Virus record (IMG/VR): IMGVR_UViG_3300050120_000152
Coordinates: 1-64,000 of that record
Length of the DNA: 64,000 bases
Strand: one strand, 5' to 3'
The notes beneath the pieces were generated by a model. It made no database searches. It had not been told where the DNA came from and worked only from the letters and a program-made list of their open reading frames with translations. Positions 3,780 to 57,278 of the stretch are shown here, in pieces. Positions within the stretch are counted from its first letter, which is position 1, and every line of letters starts with the position of its first letter. The translations under genes were made by a program, and so were the position numbers.

Positions 3780-3786
3780 GAAATAC

Positions 3787-3878: not shown

Positions 3879-3881
3879 TTT

Positions 3882-31165: not shown

Positions 31166-31166
31166 A

Positions 31167-37579: not shown

Positions 37580-38052
37580 TGCATTTAATAAGAGATTTAC
37601 GCGATGATGATATTGATGCTATGTATGATGGCATCTTAAGAGAATTTGAATTAAAAATAAAAAATTGGCGCACAGATGTTAAATTAGGCGGCAAAAATAT
37701 CAAGGTTGCCAACGTTCAGCAAGCATCTTTTTTGGCATATTATGATGAAATTCGAGTTGATTTGAAATCATTGTTAAATTATTATGAAATGAGAGTTAAG
37801 CAAGTTCGCGCCGAATCATTACAAGCTATTTACAAAAATTCAAAATATGATTATAGTTCGACAGAAAAAGATAAAATCATTGATACCGATCCAAAGTACA
37901 TAAAATACAAGCGCATATATTTGGAAGTTGATGAAATGTATAATATGCTTTCATCCATTTCAGAACAATTTAAAAACCGTGCATATACTATCAATAATCA
38001 AGTTAAAATTTTGGTTGCAAGCTTAGAAGATATTACATTAACCGATGACTAA
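37579..38052 (+). CDS. uvsY: Recombination mediator
   Basis: Helical protein between uvsX and uvsW; 'KDKIIDTDPKY', 'FKNRAYTINN'. Confidence 0.75.
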   Translation: MHLIRDLRDDDIDAMYDGILREFELKIKNWRTDVKLGGKNIKVANVQQASFLAYYDEIRVDLKSLLNYYEMRVKQVRAESLQAIYKNSKYDYSSTEKDKIIDTDPKYIKYKRIYLEVDEMYNMLSSISEQFKNRAYTINNQVKILVASLEDITLTDD

Positions 38053-39532
38053 TAAAACTGCTATAATAAAAATTCTTGACGAAGTAAATTGCGTTATTAT
38101 CGGATTAGATGATGCAGATAACATTTTCCTGAAAAAAAAATATTCACCATTAGCTGAAGGCTATTTTTTTAGTAAAAAATATAAGCTTGGTATATGGGAT
38201 GGCACAATATCATTTTATTCAAAAGGTGGTAAAACTTTTAATAATCTTATTCCTGAAATATATAAGTTTCTGAAAGACCGTCAATATAAAATTGAATTAA
38301 TAGATAATAGACTGTCTCACAAATTAACTGTACCATACATTGATAAGGATTATTTTAAAGATACTAATATTACTCTCGGTGATCATCAAGTTGATGCTGT
38401 AAATAAAATATTAGATAATAATGGTGGTATAATTTTAGCGGCCACCGGGTCAGGTAAAACTTTCATATGCTCAGCATTGGCTAAAAGTTATAATGATACT
38501 TATGGATATAAGGTTATTATCATAGTACCATCATCAGATTTGGTATTACAGGGTGTAGAAGACCTACAAAATCTTAATATAGATGTAGGTCAGTACGATG
38601 GCGATAAAATAGATTTAGATCATCCTATTATTATAAGTACATGGCAGAAAATCCAAAATAATCCACATATGGTTGGTGCATATAATATTATAATAGTAGA
38701 TGAAGCACACGGTACTCGTGGTGCAGTATTAAAAGATATTCTTAATAATTACGGTGCCCATGCATTGGTACGAATTGGAGTTACTGGAACTTTGCCAGAG
38801 TCTGAAGTAGACAAACTATCAGTTAAAATTACATTAGGTGATCCAGTCTATATTATTACAGCAAAACAATTGATAGATTCGGGATGGTTAGCCGAACTTG
38901 ATATTGATATATTAGAGTTAACCGAAGATAAGAAACCCGAATTTGCACAATGGAAAATAGAGTTTCCTGATGAAGCTGAGGGTGTCACCTATGCTAAATT
39001 CTTAGAAACACTATTTCCAGATTATGATTCAGAAAAAAAATATTTAAATAGTAATGAGTCTAGGTTATCATATATTTCTAATATAGTAGAAATAAACCGA
39101 TCAAAAAATAAAGGGAATAGTCTTATTTTAGTAAACTCTATTGCGGCAGGAAAAAAATTACAAACTATGTTGCCAGAATCACATTTTGTCCATGGTATGG
39201 ATAAAAAAGCATTCAGACGTGCGGTGTATCAATTATTTAAAGATAATGATGATGTAGTAGTTATAGCAACATCACAATTAGCATCAACCGGATTAAATAT
39301 TCCTAGAATATTTTATTTATATTTAATTGATATTGGTAAGAGCTATATTAGAGTTATTCAATCAATTGGTAGAGGATTACGTAAAGCTCATGATAAAAAT
39401 CATGTATTTGTGTTTGACATATCAAGTAATTTAAAGTATAGTAAGCAACATCAAGCTAAACGTATTGTGCATTACAAAAAAGCAGAATATCCTCACAAAA
39501 AAATAAAGATTGATTATAAGAAAACACATTAA
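38045..39532 (+). CDS. uvsW: SF2 DNA helicase
   Basis: WDG.I, ATGSGKT, DEAH, GVTGT, STGLNIP, QSIGRGLR. Confidence 0.92.
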   Translation: MTNKTAIIKILDEVNCVIIGLDDADNIFLKKKYSPLAEGYFFSKKYKLGIWDGTISFYSKGGKTFNNLIPEIYKFLKDRQYKIELIDNRLSHKLTVPYIDKDYFKDTNITLGDHQVDAVNKILDNNGGIILAATGSGKTFICSALAKSYNDTYGYKVIIIVPSSDLVLQGVEDLQNLNIDVGQYDGDKIDLDHPIIISTWQKIQNNPHMVGAYNIIIVDEAHGTRGAVLKDILNNYGAHALVRIGVTGTLPESEVDKLSVKITLGDPVYIITAKQLIDSGWLAELDIDILELTEDKKPEFAQWKIEFPDEAEGVTYAKFLETLFPDYDSEKKYLNSNESRLSYISNIVEINRSKNKGNSLILVNSIAAGKKLQTMLPESHFVHGMDKKAFRRAVYQLFKDNDDVVVIATSQLASTGLNIPRIFYLYLIDIGKSYIRVIQSIGRGLRKAHDKNHVFVFDISSNLKYSKQHQAKRIVHYKKAEYPHKKIKIDYKKTH

Positions 39533-40042: not shown

Positions 40043-40438
40043 ATGATAACTAAAACAAAAAAGAATAGTACCAAAAATGTCACACCTATGAGTGTGCAAG
40101 AATTTAAAATGTGGATTAAAGGATTATCAGATTTCCAAGATGATAGCTGGTCACCTAACAAACCTCAATGGGAACATATAAGATTATTAATTGACAGTCT
40201 TAGTGATACTGTAGTAGTGACAAATAGGCCGCAGTCCCAGCAACCTATTAGACAACCTGTAGCACCCATGGGGGAGACTGCTGTGTTAGCTGACAATTTA
40301 AGTCAGCCTATGACACAACCAGTCCAACAGCGATTTCTCGGAGGGCAATCCGATAAATCAAAATCCACCGGAGAGCATGACGAATTCGGCCACCCAGTCC
40401 TCAAATCAGCCTACAATACAGGATCAGATTTCGCTTAA
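40043..40438 (+). CDS. Hypothetical protein
   Basis: Start inferred at MITKTKK. Confidence 0.6.
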   Translation: MITKTKKNSTKNVTPMSVQEFKMWIKGLSDFQDDSWSPNKPQWEHIRLLIDSLSDTVVVTNRPQSQQPIRQPVAPMGETAVLADNLSQPMTQPVQQRFLGGQSDKSKSTGEHDEFGHPVLKSAYNTGSDFA

Positions 40439-40445
40439 TAAAATT

Positions 40446-41000
40446 ATGAAAAGCATCTTAAAAGATAGAGTATTATGGTATGATGGTGAAATTACCTTCA
40501 CCAGCGATCAATTATTAGATTTTATTGTTGGTGGTGGAGTTATAGAAGATAAAATTCATATAGCCGCATTAGATGAAGAAGTAATTAAATTTAAAAAATT
40601 ACACCCTTCAGTAAAATTGAATGTTAAGCGTGAGTTAGATCATGTAGACCAGACATGGAATATTCCCGATTCATATAAAGACATAAATATCAATAAGTAT
40701 GTACAAGCTAGATTCGTAGATTTGATCAATAAGAGAGAAGAAACGGGTAAAGATTTTTCTGAAAATGAGGTAATGGAACGCCTTAATCGTATAGAAACTG
40801 AATTAGAACTTTATAAAGAATATGATATGGATATTATCATAAAAGCAATAATATATATTATTGATGTATTTAAAAATAATGGGGTAGTTTGGGGTACGGG
40901 TCGAGGTAGTTCATGTAGTTCTTACATATTGTACTTAATAGGATTACATAGTGTTGACAGCGTAAAATATGAATTAGATTTAAACGAATTTTTTAAATAG
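40446..41000 (+). CDS. DNA polymerase III alpha-like fragment A (GRGS motif)
   Basis: RIETEL..Y...GVVWGTGRGSSCSSYILYLIGLHSVDSVKY.L..EF aligns with DnaE 'GPGRGSGAGSLVAY..IT..DP..LLFERF'. Confidence 0.8.
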   Translation: MKSILKDRVLWYDGEITFTSDQLLDFIVGGGVIEDKIHIAALDEEVIKFKKLHPSVKLNVKRELDHVDQTWNIPDSYKDININKYVQARFVDLINKREETGKDFSENEVMERLNRIETELELYKEYDMDIIIKAIIYIIDVFKNNGVVWGTGRGSSCSSYILYLIGLHSVDSVKYELDLNEFFK

Positions 41001-41008
41001 GTAAAAAT

Positions 41009-41359
41009 ATGACAAAACGTAAAAGTATGCGCGGCAAAGATGTTGACGTTGGATTGATTCGCATGAAACAACAGTTAATGGATGGTAAGAAAACAGAGCC
41101 AAACATTAAACGGGAGGATTATGTGAGTGATCGTAGACGTAGATCATCATCTAAGAGAATTGATGAAATGTTTGCCAATGAACAAATCGTAAGACAAAAA
41201 TTAGTTGATCAAAAAAAGGTTGAAGGTCAGTCGCATGAAATTGTTACTGAAGTTATTGGTGTAACCGAAGCCGCTATTCTCGCAGAAATGGTTCCTGACG
41301 AAACATCTGAAAATGCTGCCAGCCCCAAAGGGCGTACCATCCATAAAAAACAGGGATAA
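41009..41359 (+). CDS. Hypothetical basic protein
   Basis: Coupled ORF. Confidence 0.65.
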   Translation: MTKRKSMRGKDVDVGLIRMKQQLMDGKKTEPNIKREDYVSDRRRRSSSKRIDEMFANEQIVRQKLVDQKKVEGQSHEIVTEVIGVTEAAILAEMVPDETSENAASPKGRTIHKKQG

Positions 41360-41361
41360 TT

Positions 41362-41697
41362 ATGATTGAAGTTTTTGACGAAATAACGAACTACAAGCCA
41401 TTACGTAAAGGTATAATTTTTCATTTCTTACAAGACGTAGAAAGTGGTACATTTAGTAATAAGACTGAATGGAATTTTCAAGTAAGAAACCGTAATGAAG
41501 ATATAAAAACACCACGTTGGGCTATTGTTGAACGTGTAGGTTCGGATGTACCGGCTCATGTCACAGAAGGTTCTTTTATTCTTATAGAGCAATTGATGTG
41601 GACAGAGGCATTCAAAGTTAATGAAGTGAAAAAGTGGTCAACCAATTTTGATAAGGTGTTGGCTACATCCACCTTGGAACCGACAGGATTATTTTAA
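41362..41697 (+). CDS. groES: Co-chaperonin GroES-like
   Basis: KPLRKGII...PRWAIVERVGSDV..V.EG..IL. Confidence 0.6.
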   Translation: MIEVFDEITNYKPLRKGIIFHFLQDVESGTFSNKTEWNFQVRNRNEDIKTPRWAIVERVGSDVPAHVTEGSFILIEQLMWTEAFKVNEVKKWSTNFDKVLATSTLEPTGLF

Positions 41698-41700
41698 TAA

Positions 41701-41731
41701 AATGATGCACATAATGTGCATCATTTATTTT
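41701..41731 (+). terminator. Hairpin/terminator
   Basis: AATGATGCAC-ATAAT-GTGCATCATT followed by T-rich tail. Confidence 0.65.
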
Positions 41732-41815
41732 TGCTAATTCAAATAATACACAAAATATATTGACCAAGCTGCCTTTTAATGCCATAATAGACTATCTAAG
41801 ATAGGATAGTTATAC

Positions 41816-42748
41816 ATGGCAAAGCAACCTTGGGATATGAAATATTTACCATCTACCGTTGATGAGTATATTTTTCAAAATGCAGCACAGAAAGAAACAA
41901 TTATTAAAATTTTAGAAGATAAGACATTCCAGCCTCTTATCCTTTCTGGTCATCGTGGTACCGGAAAAACTAGTTTAGCATACTTAATAAAAAGTGAATA
42001 TGGCATTGAAGACAGTGATTGGTTAAAAATCAATGGTGCTGATGAAAATGATATTGGAACCGTTCGTGTAAAGGTTAAAAGTTTCGTTAGCTCTATGGCA
42101 ATGTCATTTGATTTTAAAATAGTATTCATAGATGAAGCAGACCGCCTATCAGCCAGTGCACAAGATGCTCTTAAAGGTATCATGGAAGAATATAAAGAAA
42201 ATGCTCGCTTTATCTTTACCACCAATAAGCCTCATAAGATCATCCCAGAATTAAAATCACGGTGCTTTGAAATTGAATTTCCCAGTTTGGATCGTGAGGA
42301 AATGACTTTTAAATTTGCTACTATACTACAAAAAGAGAAAATCAACGTAACCGATTTAGAAATTTTAGATGAATATGTTAATAATTGTTATCCTGATTTT
42401 AGAAAATTATTAATTACAGCAGAACAATCTGTGCGTAAAGGCACATTACCACCAATGTCAAATGTTGTATCAGATACAACAGAATTCATGGTTACTGCTA
42501 TCGAATTCATTGAAAGTGATAATTGGGAAGCTGCTAGAACGTATTTGGCTGCTAATGTGCCAGATGATCGTTGGGATGAATGCTATAGATTTTTATATGA
42601 TTACTTACATGAACTCGGTAAATTTAAAGATACCAAGAAATGGAAATCCGGTATTGTTATTATTGCCGATCATTTATATCGTCATGGATTCGTTGCCGAT
42701 GCCGAAATGAATTTTGCAGCTTGTTTAATTAGATTATCAGAAGTTTAA
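41816..42748 (+). CDS. gp44: Sliding-clamp loader AAA+ subunit (T4 gp44/RFC-like)
   Basis: W..KY.P, GHRGTGKT, IDEAD, FIFTTN, SRC, YPDFRK. Confidence 0.92.
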   Translation: MAKQPWDMKYLPSTVDEYIFQNAAQKETIIKILEDKTFQPLILSGHRGTGKTSLAYLIKSEYGIEDSDWLKINGADENDIGTVRVKVKSFVSSMAMSFDFKIVFIDEADRLSASAQDALKGIMEEYKENARFIFTTNKPHKIIPELKSRCFEIEFPSLDREEMTFKFATILQKEKINVTDLEILDEYVNNCYPDFRKLLITAEQSVRKGTLPPMSNVVSDTTEFMVTAIEFIESDNWEAARTYLAANVPDDRWDECYRFLYDYLHELGKFKDTKKWKSGIVIIADHLYRHGFVADAEMNFAACLIRLSEV

Positions 42749-42757
42749 GGAATAGAT

Positions 42758-43075
42758 ATGCATTTTACCGAAGAAAAAATTGCCAGCGATATTCATAAAA
42801 TATCAACTAACCGCGATAAAAATGAACGATTATCATGGAAAAGAAAAAAAGATAAAATAGAAACTCTGGTGAAAGAGTTAGAACCTATTGAAGATGAAAT
42901 ATTAAAACTTATTGAAGATAAAAAAGCTCCGATTCTTAATCAAATTATTGCATTACGTGGTGAAATGATTAAAGAATGTGTACATCCCAAAGATATGTTA
43001 GTGCATTATGGTAATTACGTAATGTGTAAATTTTGCGAAGCTAAACTTACCGTATCGAGTAATAGAACGCTATGA
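42758..43075 (+). CDS. Hypothetical protein with CxH..CxxC
   Basis: AGGA RBS; coiled coil plus Zn-binding motif. Confidence 0.65.
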   Translation: MHFTEEKIASDIHKISTNRDKNERLSWKRKKDKIETLVKELEPIEDEILKLIEDKKAPILNQIIALRGEMIKECVHPKDMLVHYGNYVMCKFCEAKLTVSSNRTL

Positions 43076-43527
43076 CTGAGAGAAAATTTGATATATTTGA
43101 ACTTATAGATAAAATTGGTAAGGCTGATATTAAGTATTTTGATAATTTACAAGATCACGAAATTAAACAAATATATCCATTAGTTCTTATGAAATGGTTG
43201 GGTGGTACGAAAAATGCTACTCAATTGAAATTGATTAATGAAATTGCCAATAGTACCGTATTTCCATTATATAAGCATCCAAAGTTAATGTATAAAATAC
43301 TCATGGCAACTACGGTATCCAAAGGTAGAGTATCATGGATAAAGAAAAAATCTAAAGAAAAAGATACTGAAATATTAAAAATAATAAAAGAATATTATGA
43401 ATGCTCTACCGAACGTGCAGTATCTTATTTGAAATTATTGTCTAATGAAGATATCATTGACTGTGCTGAATTGTTAGGTACTGAAAAAGAAACAATGACT
43501 AAATTGAAGAAAGAACTTAATGGATAA
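43072..43527 (+). CDS. gp62: Clamp loader small subunit (T4 gp62-like)
   Basis: 'FDIFELID..YFD..YPLVLMKWL..WIKK..IIKEYYECS.E.A..YL.LL'; position after gp44. Confidence 0.7.
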   Translation: MTERKFDIFELIDKIGKADIKYFDNLQDHEIKQIYPLVLMKWLGGTKNATQLKLINEIANSTVFPLYKHPKLMYKILMATTVSKGRVSWIKKKSKEKDTEILKIIKEYYECSTERAVSYLKLLSNEDIIDCAELLGTEKETMTKLKKELNG

Positions 43528-44197
43528 AAAATTAACATGTGATTTTTGTGACAAGCAATTTGTCAGAGAAGTTAATTTTCTCAAACATAAGTGTGAGAAA
43601 ATGAAACGATATGAATTGTTCAAAAAGCCAATAGGCCATTTGGCATATCTTACATTTAATCAATGGCGAAAAATTTGTGGATATCCATCAGTAACGGTTG
43701 ATACATTTACATCATCGAAATATTTTAATTCATTTGTAAAGTTTGCCGAATTCTCACACACGATGGCTATTCCAGATAAAATAGGTTATATCGAATTAAT
43801 GGTAAAAAAGACATTAATGCCATTTGATTGGTGTGATAATGATGTTTATGATTATTACATTACTAATTTTGATAAAGAATACAGCATTGATGAAAAAGTT
43901 GATTTATCCATAGAAACGATTGTAGATATTTCCGAGAAACAAGGTTGTGAGGTTTCCGAAGTATTCAAGCATGTTACTCCCATACAAGTTATAAAATACA
44001 TTACATCTCGAAAATTATCTCCATGGTTGTTATTACCGAGCAAAAAATTTATGGATTTTATGACATTTGATACAACACCCGAAGAACGTTTGTTATTTGG
44101 GTCATTTATTAATGTTGCAGAATGGAAAAAGTATTTTATAGCTAATCCAGACAAAGTTACAGAAATAAAAAATATCAATCGACAATTAGGAATCTGA
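43520..44197 (+). CDS. Zinc-finger (CxxC..HxC) hypothetical protein
   Basis: CDFCDKQF.RE..FLKHKC. Confidence 0.7.
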   Translation: MDKKLTCDFCDKQFVREVNFLKHKCEKMKRYELFKKPIGHLAYLTFNQWRKICGYPSVTVDTFTSSKYFNSFVKFAEFSHTMAIPDKIGYIELMVKKTLMPFDWCDNDVYDYYITNFDKEYSIDEKVDLSIETIVDISEKQGCEVSEVFKHVTPIQVIKYITSRKLSPWLLLPSKKFMDFMTFDTTPEERLLFGSFINVAEWKKYFIANPDKVTEIKNINRQLGI

Positions 44198-44198
44198 G

Positions 44199-44206
44199 TA
44201 TAAATA
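44199..44206 (+). promoter_or_regulatory. Late promoter for the virion-protein cluster
   Basis: TATAAATA 30 nt upstream of ATG 44236; another at 47743-47750. Confidence 0.75.
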
Positions 44207-44235
44207 CTGGATAAACCAGATATCTTGAGGCTTGG

Positions 44236-46077
44236 ATGGCAAACAATTGTGCAGATGGCGTATATAATATTGATTATACGGACAACACTCTAAATCCTAT
44301 TGTAGTGAATAAACAAACATTGATTCAAAATGTGTTGGATATTACATTATTGGGTCAAGGCAGAAAAGAATATGGTGAAATATTTGATGAAAATATTTTA
44401 CATTTATTAGAAAATTTTTCATGTCCTGAAGACCCTATAAATCTCGGAAACCCCAATCTCACAAAAACTACATCTAATCTATTAGAGCATCCCACTAAAG
44501 GGCAGCTTTGGTATAACTCTACCACACTTAGATTATATGTATATAACGGTAGCAGCTGGTTTGCATTATCTACTTCCTCGGATATTGGAGGTAACAGCGG
44601 AATTATTGCTGACGGAATGCAATTACCTCGGCCAATATCACCAATAACTGGATATGAATTTCAATATTCTGAATGTAGTTGGATCGTTAGCCCATTCAAC
44701 TTTCCATCAGAAGTTGATTACATGGTATGTTATTCTGATACAACCTCATTAACTACATCACAATATCGATTATCATCATCTTCTAGTATAATCAGTGGAT
44801 ATGCATTTTATCAGATTATAGGTATAAAATATAATAATAATACTGGGAGTGATGTGCCTATTGTGCCACCACTGCCATCATCTACACCAAGAATGTCTTC
44901 TACACCAGCACCATCAGTATCACCTACCCCAACACCGATTGTTGGATCATCGGTAACGCCTACACCATCAATAACACCATCGTCTACTGTACCAGTTACA
45001 CCCACGACAACACCTACACCTACACTTAGCCCTACATCCACTCCAGCACCTTCTGCAACGCCTGCAACAAGCGTCCCTATCCTAAGAGGCACCCTATTCA
45101 TATCTCCTTCATTAGGATATCCGCAAGGCACTAATACAGCATTACCGTCCCCATGTTCAACGAACGCTACTACAGATGTTAATTGTCAATATACCATGTC
45201 TTTAATTGTTCAAGGATTATCAGGTGGAAGTCCTCCCTATTCAGTTGATTATTCGCATGTTAATTTCTCAGCATCTATTATCAATACATCAACATCAACA
45301 ACTGTACCATTCGCTTATTATTATGCTTATACAGGGGCATCTGGCGTAACTACATCGCCATTGAGAACAGGCGTAACATCAGCTAGTACATTGACAATGT
45401 CTGCACAATTTAATGAAGTCGGTGCACAAAATCAGGTTGGATGCGGTAATGGTAGCTGGTCGCAAGGAATAGTTGGTGGTAGTTATGTAACGATAACAGA
45501 TTCGGTTGGAAGAACTTTAAATTTGTACACTCCATCAGGTCTGAACGGTAACGTTTACGGAACATCTTATACTACACCACAATCAGCCTATATTGATAAT
45601 TATTTATCGGCCCCAGCATGTGGCGGTGGTGGCGGTGGTGGTGGCGGCTGCGTATCTATTAATTCGGTATTTCCTAACGGAAATATAGCAGAAACTGTAG
45701 AGTTAGATCATATGTTGGCTACATGCGATCCATATGATTTCTTTAATTGTGGCGATAACGCGGTCACATATGCCGCAACTAGATTACAACCTTGCGTGAG
45801 ACTTGTAACAGAATCTGGCGCATCATTAATATGCTCTACAACTGCTCCTATTCCAACATTAGAAAATGGATATATGTTAGCACCTACTTTGGCTAATCAA
45901 AGTGTTCCGGTAATGCGTACAAATATAACCAAGTGGGAAAATGTTGTATCCATTGAAGATGTTGGCGAATGTTTAGTGCGTCATATTACGGTAGGCGATA
46001 GATGCTTTTGGGCTGGTGAGACAACTGATGCCTTTATATTACATCATAACTTAAAAAAACCACCAAGCGACTTATAA
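44236..46077 (+). CDS. Virion (baseplate/fibre-type) protein: shared N-domain + Pro/Thr linker + beta domain + Gly9 + C-terminal Hint domain (45649-46050)
   Basis: YG....EN.LH.LENF..P..GQLWYN N-domain; GGG|CVSINS...FILHHN|LKKPPSDL. Confidence 0.8.
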   Translation: MANNCADGVYNIDYTDNTLNPIVVNKQTLIQNVLDITLLGQGRKEYGEIFDENILHLLENFSCPEDPINLGNPNLTKTTSNLLEHPTKGQLWYNSTTLRLYVYNGSSWFALSTSSDIGGNSGIIADGMQLPRPISPITGYEFQYSECSWIVSPFNFPSEVDYMVCYSDTTSLTTSQYRLSSSSSIISGYAFYQIIGIKYNNNTGSDVPIVPPLPSSTPRMSSTPAPSVSPTPTPIVGSSVTPTPSITPSSTVPVTPTTTPTPTLSPTSTPAPSATPATSVPILRGTLFISPSLGYPQGTNTALPSPCSTNATTDVNCQYTMSLIVQGLSGGSPPYSVDYSHVNFSASIINTSTSTTVPFAYYYAYTGASGVTTSPLRTGVTSASTLTMSAQFNEVGAQNQVGCGNGSWSQGIVGGSYVTITDSVGRTLNLYTPSGLNGNVYGTSYTTPQSAYIDNYLSAPACGGGGGGGGGCVSINSVFPNGNIAETVELDHMLATCDPYDFFNCGDNAVTYAATRLQPCVRLVTESGASLICSTTAPIPTLENGYMLAPTLANQSVPVMRTNITKWENVVSIEDVGECLVRHITVGDRCFWAGETTDAFILHHNLKKPPSDL

Positions 46078-46112
46078 TATTATAACTAATCCAAACTGGA
46101 ATCGAATACAAA

Positions 46113-47474
46113 ATGACTGACTATAGTGTAAAATATACTGACAAAACAAAACCGCCAATAACTATTCCAGAAGGAGTAGTTGATTCTTCATTGGATATCG
46201 TATTGTTTGGTAGAGTAGATTTGGAATACGGCCAACAATTAAACCAAGATATGCTTAATATTTTGGAACGATTTGCCTGCCCTCAAAATGCAGCATCTAC
46301 ACTAAGCAACACCTATCCAGACTATACCATTAATGGGAATGCTTTAACCCAGCCTACTCAAGGTCAATTATGGTTCAATTCTACCACACAAAAGTTGTTT
46401 GTATGGAATGGCACAAAATGGGAAACCATCAGAAACAAAGGAGATGTGGCGGGCAATTGGGGGCAATTATTAGATGGCAGTCAAATTCCCAGACCCGTAA
46501 ATCCTGTCAATGGATATGTTTATCCTTATAGCCAATGTATTTGGGCGGTTTCCCCAGCAGCATTACCCCAAGCGTTTACTTACATGGAATGCACTACTGA
46601 TACAAATGCAGTGGTAAGTATGAAATATAGAGCTTATGGCGATAGTGTACTTTCTTCAGGTATTGCAAACTATTTGATTATTGCTATTGCTGGCAATATT
46701 AATATGGGAACGATTTCAGTAACACCAGAAATACCATCAGTTTCAGGTACACCAACCCCAACCCCACCAACCTCTGTAACGCCATTAGTATCAATAACTC
46801 CTTCCCCTACACCAACCAGCACACCGGGAACATCTGCAGTACCATCACCAACCCCAGCAGCTTCTACGAGTAGTACCCCAGCAGCATCATTAACTGCTAC
46901 CCCAACCCCAACACTTACCCCAGCATCAACATTAACTCCAACTCCATCACCATTCGTGGATGCCTGTTCAAGATGTATCGCTGATGGGTTCCATTGTTGC
47001 GTTGCTGTAAACTCATTTTTGCCAGACGGAAGCATTGCTGGACATGTTCAAGTGGGAACTTCAATGTCTCTTGCTGACCCGGTGACCTTAGAACCATCTA
47101 CTGGAATAGTATCATATTCTGAACCAAGTTTACAAGAAAGTGTTAGGGTAGTTACCCAATCGGGAGCATCACTAAATTGTTCACTTACAGCACCATTACC
47201 GACTACAGAAGGATTATTATTAGCTCCTGATGTATTAGGTAAATTTGTAGCTATTATGATGAACGATATTGCATCTTGGGATGAAGTAATTTCAGTAGAA
47301 CCTATAGGCAAGATATGGGTACAACATATAACAGTTGGTGACAATTGTTTTTGGGCTGGCGACAGCTCTAATGCATTTATATTACATCATAATATCAAAT
47401 GCTGCTATTGCGATGGTCAAACTGACTGTTCTTGGGTTCCACCTAACTGTTGTGATGGAACGGATTGCTCGTAA
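46113..47474 (+). CDS. Paralogous virion protein with Hint domain (46998-47393) and Cys-rich 26-aa tail
   Basis: Same N-domain and PT linker; FHC|CVAVNS...FILHHN|IKCCYC...CCDGTDCS. Confidence 0.8.
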   Translation: MTDYSVKYTDKTKPPITIPEGVVDSSLDIVLFGRVDLEYGQQLNQDMLNILERFACPQNAASTLSNTYPDYTINGNALTQPTQGQLWFNSTTQKLFVWNGTKWETIRNKGDVAGNWGQLLDGSQIPRPVNPVNGYVYPYSQCIWAVSPAALPQAFTYMECTTDTNAVVSMKYRAYGDSVLSSGIANYLIIAIAGNINMGTISVTPEIPSVSGTPTPTPPTSVTPLVSITPSPTPTSTPGTSAVPSPTPAASTSSTPAASLTATPTPTLTPASTLTPTPSPFVDACSRCIADGFHCCVAVNSFLPDGSIAGHVQVGTSMSLADPVTLEPSTGIVSYSEPSLQESVRVVTQSGASLNCSLTAPLPTTEGLLLAPDVLGKFVAIMMNDIASWDEVISVEPIGKIWVQHITVGDNCFWAGDSSNAFILHHNIKCCYCDGQTDCSWVPPNCCDGTDCS

Positions 47475-47479
47475 TAATT

Positions 47480-47671
47480 ATGAAATCTATAAATAAAAAA
47501 AATCCCAAACCTAAAAAGCTTACTTCATTGAATAAGCCAATTCAACGTAAAATACGTGATGTTATATTATGTGAAAGTTGTGAAATACAATGCGCTGGTC
47601 ATGGCGGCGGTACATATACCTATGATGGTAGATGTTTATGTAATGATGGTAGTTTATTGGAATGTATATGA
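47480..47671 (+). CDS. Small basic Cys-rich protein
   Basis: MKSINKK...CESCEIQC...CLC...ECI. Confidence 0.5.
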   Translation: MKSINKKNPKPKKLTSLNKPIQRKIRDVILCESCEIQCAGHGGGTYTYDGRCLCNDGSLLECI

Positions 47672-47686
47672 TATCGGAGAATAGTT

Positions 47687-47860
47687 ATGTTTCTTATTGT
47701 AAAACAAGATGATAGTGTAATCATAGGAAGTGCCATAAAACCTATAAATATTGGTGAGGCATCCAAAAATGGATACATCATCTGTGAAATACCTGATAAA
47801 GAATTTGACCCTAAAATGATAGGATCAAAAATAGAAGATTTTGACTACTGGAATGATTAA
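47687..47860 (+). CDS. 57-aa protein MFLIVKQDDS...DFDYWND (absent from the ORF track)
   Basis: GGAG RBS; TAATG coupling to gene 47860. Confidence 0.7.
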   Translation: MFLIVKQDDSVIIGSAIKPINIGEASKNGYIICEIPDKEFDPKMIGSKIEDFDYWND

Positions 47861-49146
47861 TGTCATATACAATAAATTTTACTGATAAACGTAAAACGCC
47901 AATCATTATTGATGATACGGATATTGACACATCTACTGATATTGCATTATTCGGTAGAAACCGCTTGACTTATGGCGAACAATTACAAGAAAATTTATTA
48001 CATATCTTAGAAAATTTTTCATGTCCAGAAGACCCTCTTTTTCCGGGTAATCCAGATTTATCCAAAGCATCGAATAATGCATTTCAACATATAACTATAG
48101 GGCAAGGTTGGTATAATTCGACCAATTCAACATTATATTATTATGATGGCACATACTGGATGCCATTAGCTGCTGAACAAAGTATCGCAGCAAATTGGGG
48201 AATCATTGCTGATGGACAGTATTTACCGAATCCAGTAAGTGCGATTACCGGACAAATATTTTCTTATGTTCATTGCGTTTATATTGTAAGCCCTCAAACA
48301 TTTCCACAAACTATTGATTATATGATATGTAAAGCAGATGCCAATGGTTTAGTTACTATGAAATATAGAATATCTGGTACTGATAGTATAATTGGTGGAG
48401 TAGCAAATTATTTGATTGTAGGTATTGCTGGCAATATTAATCAACCTGCTCCTACTGTTGCAGTAACACTTACTCCTACCCCTACACCTACGTCATCGTC
48501 GGGAACATCACATACACCAACACCAACTATTACCCCATCTACCACGCCAGTATCAACAACAACCCCAACACCAACACCAACAACATCAGTCGGTACATCG
48601 ATTACTCCTGTACCATCGGTAACACCAACACGTATTCCAATATCATCGGTAACGCCAACACCAACAACATCAGCAGCACCATTATCGCCATTAGCATTCC
48701 AAGGTCAATCTATTCATGCATTTACCGATGTACCGCCAAGATGTCCCGGTGTGGCAGGGGCGGCAACTATCCAATGTATATTCAATGCAGATGGAACATA
48801 TTCTATAAACACAACTTCCAATCAATTTGGACAAGACAGAACACCAAATCAATCTGGTATATGGTTACCTGCTGGATGGTCATCATCGGATACATCAATA
48901 AAATTTACCGATGTAGTTAATTTTATATCGGAAGCTAACCCAGCGTCAGTAACTAATTCTGCACCAGCATATCAACCATTAGCCGCAACACAATTATATA
49001 CATTATCTACTTCCGGTGGTTGTACCGCAGGTACAGGTATGGGATCAAATATTACACTGACAATTTCGCTTAAACGGATATCTACTGGCGTATTTTTTAA
49101 TACTACATGTACCTTAGATTGTGAATCATCTGATGCAGGTTTGTAA
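47860..49146 (+). CDS. Third paralogous virion protein (same N-domain + PT linker, different non-Hint C-domain)
   Basis: YTINFTD..LFGRNR..YGE.L.ENLLH.LENF; TPTP tract. Confidence 0.8.
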   Translation: MSYTINFTDKRKTPIIIDDTDIDTSTDIALFGRNRLTYGEQLQENLLHILENFSCPEDPLFPGNPDLSKASNNAFQHITIGQGWYNSTNSTLYYYDGTYWMPLAAEQSIAANWGIIADGQYLPNPVSAITGQIFSYVHCVYIVSPQTFPQTIDYMICKADANGLVTMKYRISGTDSIIGGVANYLIVGIAGNINQPAPTVAVTLTPTPTPTSSSGTSHTPTPTITPSTTPVSTTTPTPTPTTSVGTSITPVPSVTPTRIPISSVTPTPTTSAAPLSPLAFQGQSIHAFTDVPPRCPGVAGAATIQCIFNADGTYSINTTSNQFGQDRTPNQSGIWLPAGWSSSDTSIKFTDVVNFISEANPASVTNSAPAYQPLAATQLYTLSTSGGCTAGTGMGSNITLTISLKRISTGVFFNTTCTLDCESSDAGL

Positions 49147-49154
49147 TTTTATCT

Positions 49155-49808
49155 ATGATCAAAAAGATCAAAAATTTAAAATTATCTATCACTCCTGAAC
49201 AAGTAAAAAACGAATGGAATGAGGTAAAATCGGTACGAAACCGTTTATTACAAAATAGTGATTGGATATTTACCCCTGATAATAATTTAGAAGAATCTAT
49301 TGTATTGTTGTGGACGGCTTGGCGAAAAAATATTAGACGCGTTGATGAATTTACTGAAATTGATAAAGCATTACAGTTTTTACAAGATTTGCAGGATAAT
49401 TCGCCGCCGATAAAATATAAAAATAATAATTATCATTCATTAGAATCTTATAAACAAGGATTAGTAAAATTGGTTAGCAGTATTATGAAAGATACTCTTG
49501 ATTCTATCCACGTATCCATAGATTGTCGAGAAATAGTAATGGAGAAATTTGAAGAAGCTGAAAAATTTCTCGCTGGTAATATAGAAAATACCATGTTGAT
49601 AGACCTTGAGGCCGCACATTTAAGCAAATCACAACTTGAGGTTGCAGAACAATTTATTAAAGAACGGCACAATTATTTTCTAAAAATAGTAACGATTGAA
49701 ACAGTTAAAAACAAATTTTTAACTCGTATAGAAAATGTTGAAACTATTCAGCAATGTGATACTATACGCGACGACTTACAAGTTTTAGGAACCAAAATAT
49801 GGATATAG
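49155..49808 (+). CDS. Tail fibre assembly chaperone-like protein
   Basis: W..V...RN.LL..SDW....D......W..WR..IR motif; follows the fibre-like genes. Confidence 0.65.
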   Translation: MIKKIKNLKLSITPEQVKNEWNEVKSVRNRLLQNSDWIFTPDNNLEESIVLLWTAWRKNIRRVDEFTEIDKALQFLQDLQDNSPPIKYKNNNYHSLESYKQGLVKLVSSIMKDTLDSIHVSIDCREIVMEKFEEAEKFLAGNIENTMLIDLEAAHLSKSQLEVAEQFIKERHNYFLKIVTIETVKNKFLTRIENVETIQQCDTIRDDLQVLGTKIWI

Positions 49809-50371
49809 ATATTGATGTACCTTCAAAATTCGATGCAATGAAAACCTTTACGGGAAAAGTGGTGCGTGCATCTCGTATAGAAAATGAGACAATACTTAAG
49901 CATAATGTAGGTGTATATTTTCAAAATATACCCACTGATCTAATAACAGGATTAGCTGCTATACCTTATGACAAATCCGAAGAATATGGATATTTCAAGA
50001 TGGATATCATTGCCAATTCAGCAATAGATGATTTTGAATCGAAAGCATGGATGGATGAATATATTGAAATAGAACCTAATTGGAACCTATTGCTTGAACG
50101 TGAGAATGTGGAAAAATTGTTTCACCTATCCAAACAATTTGACGTTGTATATGCGGTAAAACCCAAATCTATATTAGAAATTGCAGACATTCTAGCTCTG
50201 ATTCGTAAAAATAAAATAAAACTATTAGATAAATATTTACAGAATAAAAAAGCTATCCGCAAGGAACTTTATACTCATCGTGAAGGTGCTGATATGAGAA
50301 AACCGCATGCATTAGCATATGCTCTTATTATTGTGCTACAACTACATTTAATAGAAATGGGAAAATTATAA
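49799..50371 (+). CDS. DNA polymerase III alpha-like fragment B (catalytic palm)
   Basis: MDIDID (DnaE PDxDxD), KHNVGVYF (HAAGVVI), YGYFKMDII (GLVKFDFL). Confidence 0.8.
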   Translation: MDIDIDVPSKFDAMKTFTGKVVRASRIENETILKHNVGVYFQNIPTDLITGLAAIPYDKSEEYGYFKMDIIANSAIDDFESKAWMDEYIEIEPNWNLLLERENVEKLFHLSKQFDVVYAVKPKSILEIADILALIRKNKIKLLDKYLQNKKAIRKELYTHREGADMRKPHALAYALIIVLQLHLIEMGKL

Positions 50372-50730
50372 TGACTATGTTACAATCCATATTAGAAGCT
50401 ATGTTACCAAATTTAACAGATAACCAGAAAGGATTGTTGATTTCTATTCATGCTTCAGCAACACCACAACAAGCCTTTGATACGGCCAATGGCACAATGA
50501 TGTCAATATCAGCTAAAGATCAAATGGTAAATATGGGATTAATAAGACAATTGGGAAATCAATTACAGTTGACTGATGCGGGAAACGAATCATTATTATC
50601 TAATAATTTAATAGATAACCTAGGTACGATTACACCGGAAGGCGATATTCAATTGAAACATTTTGAAAATAATAAATCGGAACAAGTCAATACAGAATCA
50701 TTTGACTTGTTCAAATCGTTCTATCAATAA
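50371..50730 (+). CDS. Hypothetical protein (MLQSILE N-terminus)
   Basis: TAATG coupling. Confidence 0.65.
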   Translation: MTMLQSILEAMLPNLTDNQKGLLISIHASATPQQAFDTANGTMMSISAKDQMVNMGLIRQLGNQLQLTDAGNESLLSNNLIDNLGTITPEGDIQLKHFENNKSEQVNTESFDLFKSFYQ

Positions 50731-51145
50731 GCTCTATTCCTTTAGGAATAGATTTCTTCTTTCTGCGCTTGATCTTAGTTGGGCCTTTCATATTATATTT
50801 GTAAATTGGGCCAATGACTCTAACAATAAAATCAGTTGAAAAGCTTCTTACGATTTTTGACATATCATGTGCAACATTTTGTTTAAAGAATTCTATAGAA
50901 ATGGGATAGTTATTTCTATGATTTTCATACCAATGATTTGCTATTTTTATAATGTGTTCTTCATCAATATTCATATTAGGGCAATAATCCAAAACATAAG
51001 CAATGACTCGATCACTTGTGATATTATCAACGATAGTTAAAAAATTCTGGTCATTATATTTAATAAGGGTTATAAACTCATAACCTTTATAATCTTTTGG
51101 ATGTTCTTCAACGATAAGTGGCTGAAAATTTAGATGTTTTTTCAT
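50711..51145 (-). CDS. Conserved hypothetical protein
   Basis: 144-aa ORF with basic C-terminus. Confidence 0.65.
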   Translation of the reverse strand: MKKHLNFQPLIVEEHPKDYKGYEFITLIKYNDQNFLTIVDNITSDRVIAYVLDYCPNMNIDEEHIIKIANHWYENHRNNYPISIEFFKQNVAHDMSKIVRSFSTDFIVRVIGPIYKYNMKGPTKIKRRKKKSIPKGIELIDRTI

Positions 51146-51207
51146 AGGATGCTTTTTTAGGTATTTATATTGTATAAAGTCATCACGAAATTATCCCATA
51201 ATTAAAA

Positions 51208-53431: not shown

Positions 53432-53680
53432 ATGCCCCGCAAAGAAACTTCCGTAAAAGATGTTCTTATCAGTGATTTTAAAGAATTGTCTACACAAGCT
53501 GTCGATCTTAAAACTAAAATTAATGAATCCAAAACTTCATTAAAGAAAGAGTATTTTAATAAAAAATTGAAAAAAATTAATAAAAAAGTTTATTCAGTGA
53601 TGATCGAACTGGCGGTGTTGGAAGCTAAATCAAAACCAAAAATTACTACAATTGAGGAAGCTACTAATGACCAAGTTTAA
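53432..53680 (+). CDS. Hypothetical coiled-coil protein
   Basis: First gene after the promoter. Confidence 0.65.
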   Translation: MPRKETSVKDVLISDFKELSTQAVDLKTKINESKTSLKKEYFNKKLKKINKKVYSVMIELAVLEAKSKPKITTIEEATNDQV

Positions 53681-54239
53681 TAAAGTATTAGCCATTCATT
53701 GTCATACGACGGGTATGGATTATGGCTCAGATGTTACGCTAAATAATCAAGCATTGACAGTAGCATTGGGCGTTGTAGATATGGAATCTATGAAAATGAC
53801 TGATACTAAGGCGGTAAAAATAAAATTCGATGGTTCTAAGTATGTATGGAATTCAAAATTAGAATCTATTCATGGTATATCTAAACAAGAAGCGGTTGAA
53901 GATGGCGAAACGTTATCCGATGCAGCATCCATCTTAGGAGAATTCTTGTATGAGCATTTTGGTATTAAGGATGCCATTCCATTATTAGGATATAATCCTA
54001 CATCGTTCCACTTACCATTTTTAAATAAAATTCTGTTATCCGAAGATTTGGCATTCAAATTTGACAATAGAAGTATAGATTTGTTCTCTCTCATGGCTAT
54101 TTTACAAAAATATACGGTCAAGGAAATGTTTGAAGTATTTGAAGTGGATCAATCTATCCCATTATCATCATTGACCATTATCAAAACTTATTTGAAAATT
54201 TTTAATACAATAAAGCATATCATTAAAGAGGTTATCTAA
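53667..54239 (+). CDS. DEDD (DnaQ/epsilon-like) exonuclease fold with catalytic Asp/Glu replaced by His
   Basis: AIHCHTTG (cf. DxETTG), IHGIS, GYN..FHLPFL (cf. HN..FD..F), IDL. Confidence 0.7.
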   Translation: MTKFNKVLAIHCHTTGMDYGSDVTLNNQALTVALGVVDMESMKMTDTKAVKIKFDGSKYVWNSKLESIHGISKQEAVEDGETLSDAASILGEFLYEHFGIKDAIPLLGYNPTSFHLPFLNKILLSEDLAFKFDNRSIDLFSLMAILQKYTVKEMFEVFEVDQSIPLSSLTIIKTYLKIFNTIKHIIKEVI

Positions 54240-56580: not shown

Positions 56581-57278
56581 TGAGTGTTCAATTAGCCACC
56601 ATGAAGCAATTACTTGCTTCAATGCAAACTTGTGCCGATGACAAGAAAGTCCTTACGCAAGCGTTAGGACTTTCCAGTTTAGTATATTTTTCAAATGATT
56701 TTATAGCAGCCCAATTAACTGCAATAGGCATGACCTACAAAATTTTTGAACAGGCTGACATGAAGTGCGTTGTAGCCGAAACTTCTGATACTATTTTTAT
56801 ATCATTTCGGGGTACTGTTCCGTCACAATGGGCAAATTGGAAAAGAATAGTTAATATTATTCCAAGATCATTTATGTATAATCTTAAAGTACATGGCGGG
56901 TTTGAGTTATATTATCAAGAATATGCCGCATTTGTTAAATCTTATATTGATACCATCACAACTCATAAATGTGTTATATTTACCGGCCATTCATTGGGTG
57001 CTGCAATAGCATCATTATTTAATATTAGTTATACTAAAAATTCCACTTCTATTACATTTGCTTCACCAGAATATTTATTCAATCATCCGTTTGAATCAAC
57101 GAGTTCAACATCTTATAGAATAATGCAAGATTTTGTAACTTACATCCCATTTAACTTACCTTTATTAAAATGGTATAAATCATCAACCACTATAAAAGTT
57201 AAATCCTTTTATAGATCGGTTAACCCATTATCCTATCACAGCCTCAATAATTATATCAAGTCGATTTTAATCACTTGA
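56580..57278 (+). CDS. Class-3 lipase (alpha/beta hydrolase)
   Basis: ISFRGT, KVHGGF, TGHSLGAA (GxSxG), ITFASP, DFVTYIP, HSLNNY. Confidence 0.85.
   Translation: MSVQLATMKQLLASMQTCADDKKVLTQALGLSSLVYFSNDFIAAQLTAIGMTYKIFEQADMKCVVAETSDTIFISFRGTVPSQWANWKRIVNIIPRSFMYNLKVHGGFELYYQEYAAFVKSYIDTITTHKCVIFTGHSLGAAIASLFNISYTKNSTSITFASPEYLFNHPFESTSSTSYRIMQDFVTYIPFNLPLLKWYKSSTTIKVKSFYRSVNPLSYHSLNNYIKSILIT

What the first reader, a model, noticed from the sequence alone, without database searches (positions are those of the whole stretch)
40446..50371. Minimal DnaE (Pol III alpha) palm split into two unlinked genes without inteins
Seen: 40446-41000 ends at the GRGS..DS..L..EF motif. 49799-50371, about 8.8 kb away, begins at MDIDID and also has the HxxGV and FKMD motifs. 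In E. coli DnaE these segments are nearly adjacent (..FERFLNPERVSMPDFDVD..) and D401/D403/D555 are catalytic, so fragment B keeps the catalytic triad. No PHP, OB or clamp-binding domain is visible. Inference: a heterodimeric mini-polymerase or nucleotidyltransferase with a non-replicative role (priming, repair, nucleotide signalling) alongside a T4-type replisome. I recall similar fragments annotated in Rak2-like phages, so novelty is in function rather than existence.
Basis: partly seen in the sequence, partly recalled or inferred. Interest (0 to 1): 0.6.

Follow-up and report, generated by a model that had tools for sequence, protein, structure and literature searches.

The report
Split mini Pol III alpha polymerase
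This jumbo phage carries a stripped-down bacterial-type DNA polymerase catalytic core cut into two separately encoded proteins that are predicted to reassemble into one active site; the arrangement was described in 2021, but its function has never been tested.

Summary
Gene A (40446-41000) is the N-terminal half of the DnaE/Pol III alpha palm. It carries the nucleotide-binding GRGS loop and a family-specific N-terminal domain. Gene B (49799-50371) is the second half of the palm. It carries all three catalytic aspartates (D2, D4, D69 = E. coli D401, D403, D555) and a reduced finger. The break falls in the E. coli 393-399 loop and sits at the same place in every homologue examined. There is no intein, no thumb and no index, ring or little finger. 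No PHP domain is found anywhere in the complete 340-kb genome, which also encodes a family-B polymerase.

A and B co-occur in all complete related phage genomes checked. A complex prediction passes its controls (0.92 against 0.63). Rare natural fusions exist in both orders, A-B and B-A.

This exact system was published by Iyer et al. 2021 (Viruses 13:63) as the split minimal Pol III alpha of group 2.2 jumbo phages. The window therefore holds a new member of a known kind. Function remains untested; an accessory templated polymerase in the T4-type replisome is the most likely role. In this lineage the two genes are not truly unlinked: they bracket the clamp-loader operon.

The parts
40446..41000 (+). 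Gene A: N-terminal subunit of the split minimal Pol III alpha (184 aa from Met24 of the 207-aa ORF 40377-41000)
   Evidence: PF07733 E 4e-10 and phrog_11127 E 4e-46. Homologues start at this Met and all end at NEFF[KR]. The upstream ORF stops at 40438.
40446..40640 (+). A, residues 24-88: small family-specific N-terminal domain, predicted to clasp subunit B
   Evidence: AF2 pLDDT about 88-92, with no DnaE counterpart. The only structural look-alike at TM>0.5 that carries a Pfam family is its own family; one further unannotated viral cluster reaches 0.51. Invariant L33, D36 and G37. Residues 24-39 and 57-60 lie in the predicted interface, for example A33-B54 and A35-B55.
40641..40997 (+). A, residues 89-207: first half of the Pol-beta-type palm (E. 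coli DnaE 271-393)
   Evidence: VIA Z 13.1 to 4jom 271-393. Profile hit to E. coli DnaE 286-392.
40890..40916 (+). WGTGRGSSC loop (A 172-180): the G[GS] nucleotide-binding motif, equivalent to E. coli G361-S364
   Evidence: Invariant in 40 homologues. Numbering. Contacts B residues 5-7 in the complex model.
41009..41697 (+). Two small conserved ORFs after A: 116 aa of unknown function and 111 aa gp31/GroES-like (phrog_931, weak)
   Evidence: The same A-hyp-'head morphogenesis' order occurs in XacN1, RaK2 and Atu_ph07. The 116-aa ORF is 32% identical to XacN1 ORF244.
41700..41726 (+). Terminator-like hairpin (12-bp stem plus T run) closing the A unit
   Evidence: Consensus scan only.
41816..42748 (+). 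gp44-type clamp loader large subunit
   Evidence: phrog_168 E 2e-66. 33% identical to RsoM2USA_213.
43072..43527 (+). gp62-like small clamp loader subunit
   Evidence: phrog_225 E 1e-8. 31% identical to RsoM2USA_212.
43520..44197 (+). Conserved 225-aa protein with a Cys/His motif near its N-terminus (phrog_11058); the gene immediately before B in RsoM2USA
   Evidence: phrog_11058 E 2e-49. 32% identical to RsoM2USA_211.
44236..49808 (+). Lineage-specific cassette between the clamp-loader block and B: three fibre-like paralogues (phrog_15511) and a tail-fibre-assembly-like ORF. It is not part of the polymerase.
   Evidence: Absent from the equivalent RsoM2USA interval. A TATAAATA late-promoter-like word at 44199-44206 precedes it.
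49799..50371 (+). Gene B: C-terminal subunit of the split minimal Pol III alpha (190 aa)
   Evidence: phrog_11778 E 7e-59. AF2 pLDDT 95. VIA Z 10.8 to 2hnh 401-782. AGGAA lies 8 nt upstream of the ATG, and the ORF overlaps the preceding ORF by 10 nt.
49802..49816 (+). D2-I-D4-I-D6: first catalytic strand (E. coli D401, D403, D405)
   Evidence: Invariant in 40 homologues. Numbering.
49997..50005 (+). K67-M-D69: third catalytic Asp and the adjacent Lys (E. coli K553, D555)
   Evidence: Invariant. hhalign register. Numbering.
50021..50368 (+). B, about residues 75-190: helical finger remnant (E. coli about 561-660 plus 757-782) carrying LFHLS, IR.NK and [RK][KR].HA.AYAL motifs
   Evidence: hhalign. 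Weak Pfam finger hit, E 0.006. VIA range.
50371..50730 (+). 119-aa ORF translationally coupled to B (ATGA overlap); conserved with XacN1 ORF227; a possible accessory protein
   Evidence: 43% identity, E 6e-19. A bidirectional hairpin follows at 50733-50752.
53652..54239 (+). Stand-alone DnaQ-like 3'-5' exonuclease (annotated 'Pol III epsilon' in XacN1); a candidate proofreader, link unproven
   Evidence: 31% identical to XacN1 ORF223, E 6e-27. phrog_192 E 5e-6.

Best explanation
A and B are the two subunits of the split minimal Pol III alpha (C-family) catalytic core of group 2.2 jumbo phages.

How it is built:
- A supplies the first half of the Pol-beta-type palm, including the GRGS loop that holds the incoming nucleotide's triphosphate. 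It also has a family-specific N-terminal domain that is predicted to clasp B.
- B supplies the strand with D2 and D4, the strand with K67 and D69, and a helical finger remnant.
- Neither protein has a complete active site, so they must form an obligate heterodimer to make one two-metal nucleotidyltransferase centre.

Shown here: homology, fold, conservation of the catalytic residues, a fixed break point, co-occurrence, natural fusions in both orders, and a predicted interface.

Inferred: the heterodimer is a template-dependent DNA polymerase working beside the phage's family-B replicase. It has no thumb, clamp-binding or proofreading domain of its own, so it would depend on replisome partners. 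The most plausible task is short-patch synthesis such as primer extension, lagging-strand synthesis or repair.
For: Homology and fold:
- A: PF07733 and phrog_11127; Z 13.1 to E. coli alpha 271-393.
- B: phrog_11778; Z 10.8 to alpha 401-782, with the 14 best chains all C-family polymerases and then a drop to Z 5.

Active site:
- Invariant in 40 diverse homologues of each protein: A W172-C180, H191, D194, S195; B D2, D4, D6, H35, K67, D69, R136, K139, H170, Y174.
- These map to E. coli G361-S364, D401/D403/D405, H511 and K553/D555.

Fixed split:
- Every A ends at NEFF[KR] and every B begins MDIDID.
- Of the 150 best representatives from the profile search of 1.84 billion proteins, the full-length ones are 180-231 aa except three.

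Fusions:
- The three exceptions join both halves. P0320 (375 aa) is A-B, with A at E 4e-16 and B at E 3e-29, and two further 376-aa clusters are 78-81% identical to it.
- P0365 (336 aa) is A-B.
- P0385 (398 aa) is circularly permuted, B then A (hhalign 94%).

Co-occurrence:
- tblastn finds A in 105 and B in 96 phage records. The genus tallies are nearly identical apart from Clostridium and Streptomyces phages, which appear in A's tally only.
- At least 27 IMG/VR contigs carry both.
- All 4 records at 100% completeness that seemed to lack one half have it. The two misses are fragments (79% and 90% complete) where the found gene sits at the contig end.

Complex prediction:
- ipSAE 0.92 in three runs against a best control of 0.63. 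The mark was reached by 58 of 80 solved complexes and 2 of 110 mismatched pairs.
- Run agreement at least 97%, partner pLDDT at least 92, and 176-180 contacts.
- The GS loop (A172-175) touches B5-7.
- Family-specific conserved residues (A33-35 and A W94 with B F41/Q42 and I55; A W34 is nearly invariant) sit in an interface that has no DnaE counterpart.

Context:
- A sits by the clamp-loader genes in the window, XacN1, RaK2 and Atu_ph07.
- B lies 0.5-3 kb from primase and gp41-type helicase in 121Q and Atu_ph07.
- The fused relatives overlap an AEP-type Replicase gene (L173) or an AAA_25 helicase-like gene (L172).
- A family-B polymerase is present in the genome.

Literature: Iyer et al. 2021, PMC7824862, sections 3.4.1 and 3.5.
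Against: - No biochemical, genetic or expression data exist for any member. Nothing was found in the literature searches.
- B's sequence similarity to DnaE is weak: no PDB hit by profile HMM, and hhalign E about 0.03 with low probability. The assignment rests on structure prediction, motif order and the PHROG profiles.
- The complex model could partly echo the intramolecular packing of solved DnaE structures.
- The enzyme lacks the thumb and most of the fingers, which in DnaE hold the primer-template. Templated synthesis is therefore not assured, and a non-templated nucleotidyltransferase activity is not excluded.
- In this phage A and B appear to lie in different transcription units. B follows a cassette that carries late-promoter-like words, though this comes from consensus scans only.
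Confidence: 0.72

Rival explanations
1. The heterodimer is an active Pol-beta-fold nucleotidyltransferase but not a templated DNA polymerase. It might be a terminal transferase, a de novo primer or oligonucleotide synthase, or a maker of a nucleotide signal or decoy used against host defence.
For: The architecture is reduced to a palm plus one helical subdomain. There is no thumb and no index, ring or little finger. This resembles minimal non-templated Pol-beta-fold transferases (general knowledge of the superfamily). The genome already has a complete family-B replicase.
Against: Every conserved neighbour is a replisome gene. The DnaE-specific finger motifs (LFHLS, IR.NK, KSHA.AYAL-like) are retained and invariant. 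No defence or counter-defence genes are consistently adjacent.
Confidence: 0.15
2. The two ORFs are decaying remnants of a once full-length phage dnaE, or a gene broken by an insertion, and have no joint function.
For: The pieces are short, the domains are missing, and other genes lie between them.
Against: There are 393 representative clusters at 50% identity. The catalytic residues are invariant and the termini are identical across very divergent phages. Both models have high pLDDT. Both halves are retained in every complete genome checked. Independent re-fusions exist.
Confidence: 0.02
3. The halves are joined after translation (split-intein trans-splicing) or at the RNA level into a single chain.
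For: Cyanobacterial DnaE is joined by a split intein (searches list that literature). HINT domains do exist in the interval, in the fibre-like proteins.
Against: A stops directly after the palm helix (EFFK-stop). B starts with Met followed by the catalytic Asp, with no Cys, Ser or Thr at +1. The models account for A 89-207 and B 1-190 as DnaE structure, leaving no room for intein halves. The HINT modules are C-terminal parts of unrelated fibre-like proteins. About 10 genes and 8.8 kb lie between A and B.
Confidence: 0.01
4. It is a specialised damage-tolerance (translesion) polymerase comparable to DnaE2/ImuC, not part of normal fork progression.
For: A sits just downstream of the UvsX (RecA-like) and UvsW recombination-repair genes in the window and in XacN1. 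It lacks a proofreading PHP domain.
Against: In RaK2 and Atu_ph07, A is not next to UvsX or UvsW. No ImuA/ImuB-like partners were seen. Universal retention in the clade fits a core function.
Confidence: 0.1

Closest known systems
Split minimal DNA polymerase III alpha of group 2.2 jumbo phages (Iyer, Anantharaman, Krishnan, Burroughs & Aravind 2021, Viruses 13:63; PHROG families 11127 and 11778)
   Same: Everything that defines it is the same. There are two standalone proteins, an N-terminal NTP-binding half and a C-terminal Mg-binding, template-binding half. They are encoded apart, there are no other Pol III domains, and they accompany a family-B polymerase, RFC-like clamp loader, UvsW and UvsX.
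   Different: Nothing essential differs. This copy is only 47-56% identical to the nearest isolates (XacN1, Xoo-sp13). Its A-B interval is enlarged by a fibre-like gene cassette.
Bacterial replicative DnaE / PolC (C-family polymerases; E. coli 2hnh, Taq 3e0d, M. tuberculosis 7pu7)
   Same: The Pol-beta-type palm is shared, with the GS loop and three acidic residues, K553-equivalent Lys and H511-equivalent His, and part of the fingers.
   Different: This is not one chain. It has no PHP, and no thumb (E. coli 433-510 is replaced by about 30 residues). The fingers between about 661 and 756 and beyond 782 are missing. There are no clamp-binding, OB or tau-binding regions. A has an extra N-terminal domain.
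Cyanobacterial split DnaE joined by the DnaE split intein
   Same: A C-family polymerase encoded by two separate genes.
   Different: The cyanobacterial protein is full length. Its break is elsewhere in the protein, and each half carries an intein half that splices the two into one chain. Here there are no intein sequences, and the halves must stay non-covalent.
T4-related phages with the family-B polymerase gp43 encoded as two genes (43A/43B), recalled from the work of Petrov and Karam and not checked here
   Same: A phage DNA polymerase whose catalytic core is reconstituted from two separately translated polypeptides without splicing.
   Different: The polymerase family and fold differ. The gp43 pieces are adjacent and together full length. 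Here the enzyme is drastically reduced and its halves can be up to about 224 kb apart (Phosso).

Membership tests
Split minimal Pol III alpha of group 2.2 jumbo phages (Iyer et al. 2021) | N-terminal NTP-binding half and C-terminal Mg-binding half as separate proteins | tested here: met
   A carries the GRGS loop and ends at the palm helix. B starts at the DxD strand.
Split minimal Pol III alpha of group 2.2 jumbo phages (Iyer et al. 2021) | Halves encoded by non-adjacent genes | tested here: met
   There are 8.8 kb and 10 genes between them in the window. The distance is 4-31 kb in most relatives and up to 182-224 kb.
Split minimal Pol III alpha of group 2.2 jumbo phages (Iyer et al. 2021) | No other Pol III domains in the genome; a family-B polymerase and T4-type accessory proteins are present | tested here: met
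   No PHP, and single palm and finger hits. PolB ORF of 918 aa. gp44/gp62-like clamp loader, UvsW and RecA/UvsX.
Split minimal Pol III alpha of group 2.2 jumbo phages (Iyer et al. 2021) | Sequence membership in the phage families that hold these proteins | tested here: met
   phrog_11127 E 4e-46 over 168 of 171 profile positions. phrog_11778 E 7e-59 over 186 of 197.
Canonical C-family replicase (DnaE/PolC) | Pol-beta-type palm with GS motif and three catalytic carboxylates | tested here: met
   but the motifs are spread over two chains.
Canonical C-family replicase (DnaE/PolC) | N-terminal PHP domain | tested here: not met
   No PF02811 match in the whole genome at E<=1; the control rang in 14 of 14 genomes.
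Canonical C-family replicase (DnaE/PolC) | Thumb domain and complete fingers | tested here: not met
   B spans E. coli 401-782 with only 190 residues. H35 = H511 lies 29 residues after D6 = D405. E. coli about 661-756 is replaced by about 10 residues.
Canonical C-family replicase (DnaE/PolC) | Clamp-binding motif, HhH/OB C-terminal region | tested here: not met
   B ends at the equivalent of E. coli residue 782. No further DnaE-like ORF exists in the genome. Specific OB and HhH profiles were not run.
Split-intein DnaE | Intein N- and C-halves at the break with a +1 nucleophile | tested here: not met
   A ends EFFK-stop and B begins M-D-I-D. The lengths are fully explained by DnaE-like structure.
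Active DNA polymerase (function) | Template-directed dNTP incorporation | not testable with these tools
   Needs biochemistry. Only residue conservation and context are available.

The most novel reading that the evidence does not exclude
Group 2.2 jumbo phages run a two-polymerase replisome. In it the thumbless, split mini C-family enzyme is a dedicated primer-extension or hand-off polymerase. It would be held at the fork by the primase-helicase and clamp loader and would pass short DNA stretches to the family-B replicase. The analogy is with DnaE and PolC in Bacillus or Pol alpha and Pol delta in eukaryotes. The single-chain and permuted relatives next to AEP replicase and helicase genes would then be the smallest known C-family replicases of small mobile replicons.
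Probability: 0.2. Interest if true: 0.7.

Novelty: new member of a known kind. Interest (0 to 1): 0.33.

Why it matters
If active, this would be the smallest known C-family polymerase core: about 370 residues in two chains, with no thumb. That would define the minimum needed for this polymerase fold and offer a tractable model for how it evolved. It would also show that a large clade of jumbo phages, including Rak2-like and 121Q-like phages considered for therapy, uses two unrelated polymerase families at once. For this scan, the main point is that the finding is real but already published. Only its function is open.

Tried and rejected
- A profile HMM of B against PDB sequences found no DnaE. 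hhalign of B against single E. coli DnaE segments gave the expected motif register but low probability and nothing for the N-terminal strand. Fold comparison was needed.
- Foldseek alone gave only E about 6e-3, though all top hits were Pol III.
- Complex prediction was busy five times before it ran.
There is therefore no read-level or expression evidence. Read laying was not used and no other route was tried.
- The sliding-clamp profile PF02916 rang nowhere, including the controls, so it says nothing.
- The small divergent ORF after B (50711-51145, minus strand, phrog_11637) could not be shown by BLASTP to be homologous to the equally placed ORF beside the fused gene in L174.
- TATAAATA words are not enriched in the window overall: 23 against 17.4 expected. 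The promoter and terminator calls are consensus matches only, so the transcription-unit statements are weak.
- The N-terminal domain of A has no informative look-alike outside its own family.
- Literature searches for follow-up experiments on the mini Pol III found none.
- Pseudogene, intein and RNA-joining explanations were rejected for the reasons given under rival explanations.

Full report
**What is there**

The window is the first 64 kb of a complete 340,344-bp IMG/VR virus record with direct terminal repeats. It has about 33% GC.

The upstream ORF stops at 40438.

ORF 49799-50371 (+), 190 aa, is gene B. It has an AGGAA 8 nt before its ATG and overlaps the preceding ORF by 10 nt.

**Homology**

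- A matches Pfam DNA_pol3_alpha above its cut-off (E 4e-10) and PHROG 11127 (E 4e-46).
- B matches PHROG 11778 (E 7e-59) and, weakly, the Pol III finger family (E 0.006).
- A profile of 40 A homologues finds E. coli Pol III alpha residues 286-392 in the PDB. A profile of B finds nothing there.
- B was therefore tested by structure. Its AF2 model (pLDDT 95) aligns to E. coli alpha residues 401-782 (Z 10.8, rmsd 3.3, 180 residues). The 14 best chains are all C-family polymerases before a drop to Z 5.
- The A model (pLDDT 85) aligns over residues 89-207 to alpha 271-393 (Z 13.1).
- The last residue of A therefore corresponds to E. coli 392/393 and the first of B to 400/401. The break lies in the loop NPERVSM (393-399).

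**Active site**

Using the E. coli sequence from the MG1655 record, the residues map as follows:

| Phage residue | E. coli DnaE residue |
|---|---|
| A G175-S178 | G361-S364 (the G[GS] loop of Pol-beta-fold transferases) |
| B D2 / D4 / D6 | D401 / D403 / D405 |
| B H35 | H511 |
| B K67 / D69 | K553 / D555 |

- Further colinear motifs are LFHLS with VFQLE (608-612), IRKNK with FRPGP (638-642), and KPHALAYAL with KSHSAAYAL (758-766).
- All of these residues are invariant or nearly so in 40 diverse homologues of each protein.
- The nucleotide-binding loop is on A and the acidic triad is on B. Neither protein alone has a complete catalytic centre.

**What is missing**

- Only 29 residues separate D6 from H35 in B, against 105 in E. 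coli. The thumb (about 433-510) is therefore absent.
- E. coli about 661-756 is replaced by about 10 residues, and nothing follows residue 782.
- As I recall the subdomain boundaries in Lamers et al. 2006 (from memory, not checked), what remains of the fingers is essentially the 'middle finger'.
- No PHP domain exists anywhere in the genome, and there is no second palm or finger match.
- A family-B polymerase ORF of 918 aa is present at about 259-261 kb.
- A residues 24-88 form a small, confidently predicted domain with no DnaE counterpart and no informative look-alike outside its own family.

**Is the split real and do the halves work together?**

1. Every A homologue ends at NEFF[KR] and every B begins MDIDID.
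2. A profile search of 1.84 billion representative proteins with B gave 393 hits at E<=1e-3. Among the best 150, the full-length ones are 180-231 aa and start at profile position 1-2, with three exceptions.
3. The three exceptions are natural fusions:
   - P0320 (375 aa) is A, a 10-residue linker, then B. Two further 376-aa clusters from other samples are 78-81% identical to it.
   - P0365 (336 aa) is a shorter A-B fusion.
   - P0385 (398 aa) has B first and the A palm half after it (hhalign 94%).
   - All three keep the GS loop, the DxD/E strand and the K.D strand. Fusions in both orders are classic evidence that the two parts form one unit.
4. Co-occurrence:
   - tblastn finds A in 105 and B in 96 phage records. 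The genus tallies match apart from Clostridium and Streptomyces phages, which appear in A's tally only and were not examined further.
   - At least 27 IMG/VR contigs carry both.
   - Eight large records seemed to lack one half. All four that are 100% complete have it, and so do two of the incomplete ones (65% and 58% complete). The two misses are fragments (79% and 90% complete) in which the found gene lies at the contig end.
5. The complex prediction passes:
   - ipSAE was 0.92 in three runs, against 0.63 for the best of three controls. The mark was reached by 58 of 80 solved complexes and 2 of 110 mismatched pairs.
   - The runs agree in at least 97% of contacts, and the partner's pLDDT is at least 92.
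   - The GS loop (A172-175) packs on B5-7.
   - The family-specific residues A33-35 and A W94 touch B I55 and B F41/Q42. That part of the interface has no equivalent in solved DnaE structures, so it is not simply remembered from them.
   - This supports binding but does not prove it.

**No intein**

- A stops right after the palm helix.
- B starts with Met followed by the catalytic Asp, with no nucleophile at +1.
- The structural alignments leave no unexplained sequence at the junction.
- HINT-like modules do occur in the interval, but they are the C-terminal ends of two fibre-like proteins and are unrelated to A or B.

**Genomic setting**

- Upstream of A lie RecA/UvsX-like (35879-37003) and UvsW (38045-39532) genes.
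- After A come a 116-aa ORF, a gp31-like ORF, a terminator-like hairpin, the gp44-type clamp loader (41816-42748), a gp62-like subunit (43072-43527) and a 225-aa protein with a Cys/His motif.
- The order A, hypothetical protein, gp31-like, clamp loader is kept in XacN1, RaK2 and Atu_ph07.
- In Ralstonia phage RsoM2USA the same block (homologues at 31-33% identity) runs straight into B, with only about 4.2 kb between A and B.
- In the window an extra 5.6 kb is inserted: three fibre-like paralogues and a tail-fibre-assembly-like ORF (44236-49808). A TATAAATA word precedes it at 44199-44206.
- On most contigs A lies upstream of B on the same strand, 4-31 kb away. The exceptions are 78 kb apart on opposite strands in one contig, 182 kb in Atu_ph07 and 224 kb in Phosso.
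- 'Unlinked' is therefore true for the family but not for this lineage, where the halves bracket the clamp-loader operon.
- In 121Q and Atu_ph07, B lies 0.5-3 kb from the primase and gp41-type helicase genes.
- The fused P0365 overlaps an AEP-type Replicase gene, and the permuted P0385 overlaps an AAA_25 helicase-like gene.
- B is translationally coupled to a 119-aa ORF that is conserved in XacN1.
- A DnaQ-like exonuclease lies 3.3 kb downstream, as in XacN1.

**Prior knowledge**

Iyer et al. [quoted passage not shown] They suggest it may cooperate with the family-B enzyme in synthesis of one strand or in repair.

Genome papers on relatives only list the genes. I found no experimental work.

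**Mechanism and verdict**

- Shown: a conserved two-chain Pol-beta-type nucleotidyltransferase core with an intact composite active site and a predicted tight heterodimer.
- Inferred: it is a template-dependent accessory DNA polymerase in the T4-type replisome. It would rely on partner proteins for DNA grip, processivity and proofreading.
- A non-templated transferase role is the main rival, because the thumb and most fingers are gone.
- Decay, intein splicing and RNA joining are rejected.

The finding is real and correctly read, but it is already in the literature. The window adds a new, fairly divergent member (47-56% identical to XacN1 and Xoo-sp13). This analysis also adds:

- the residue-level map;
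- the thumb and finger deletions;
- the clasp domain on A;
- the passed complex test;
- the fused and permuted relatives;
- the clamp-loader bracketing.

Noticed in passing
window 44236-46077 and 46113-47474 (C-terminal about 150 aa of each): Two of three fibre-like paralogues (phrog_15511) end in a module that begins with Cys and ends ...ILHHN. For the second paralogue, the Atlas structure search matched PT-HINT or intein-bearing clusters in all 10 rows (TM 0.72-0.80). Pfam found nothing. The third paralogue (47860-49146) lacks the module. This suggests C-terminal HINT autoprocessing domains on tail-fibre-like proteins.
   Followed up: partly
window 30410-34122: The large terminase appears in three consecutive ORFs. 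Two adjacent ORFs each match Terminase_6N (30410-31165 and 31167-32033), and a 704-aa ORF matches Terminase_6C (32008-34122). This may be a duplication or split of the ATPase domain.
   Followed up: no
L172 (Logan SRR25229949 contig) 871-2067; L173 (JGI 3300080032 contig) 3171-4181; L171 and L174: Single-chain mini Pol III alpha proteins exist outside the split rule. There is an A-B fusion (375-376 aa, three clusters) and a short A-B fusion overlapping a PF03090 Replicase gene. There is also a circularly permuted B-A form overlapping an AAA_25 helicase-like gene. These may be minimal C-family polymerases of small replicons.
   Followed up: partly
window 53652-54239: A stand-alone DnaQ-like exonuclease, homologous to XacN1 'Pol III epsilon' ORF223 (31% identity, E 6e-27). 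It lies 3.3 kb downstream of B. Whether it serves the mini polymerase is unknown.
   Followed up: partly
window 58264-58794, 60766-61887, 62169-63593: A NAD-related gene set: a NADAR domain protein (E 3e-48), a cytidylyltransferase/Nudix fusion (NadR/NMNAT-like, phrog_395) and nicotinamide phosphoribosyltransferase (phrog_448, E 3e-132). This looks like a phage NAD+ salvage or regeneration module.
   Followed up: no
window 50711-51145 (- strand): A small divergently transcribed ORF (phrog_11637) directly after the B unit, with a TATAAATA word upstream at 51162-51169. An ORF of similar size and orientation follows B in XacN1, Atu_ph07 and 121Q, and follows the fused gene in L174. Pairwise BLASTP to the L174 ORF was not significant.
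   Followed up: partly
window 56580-57278: A class 3 lipase domain protein (Lipase_3, E 4.5e-11) in a phage genome.
   Followed up: no
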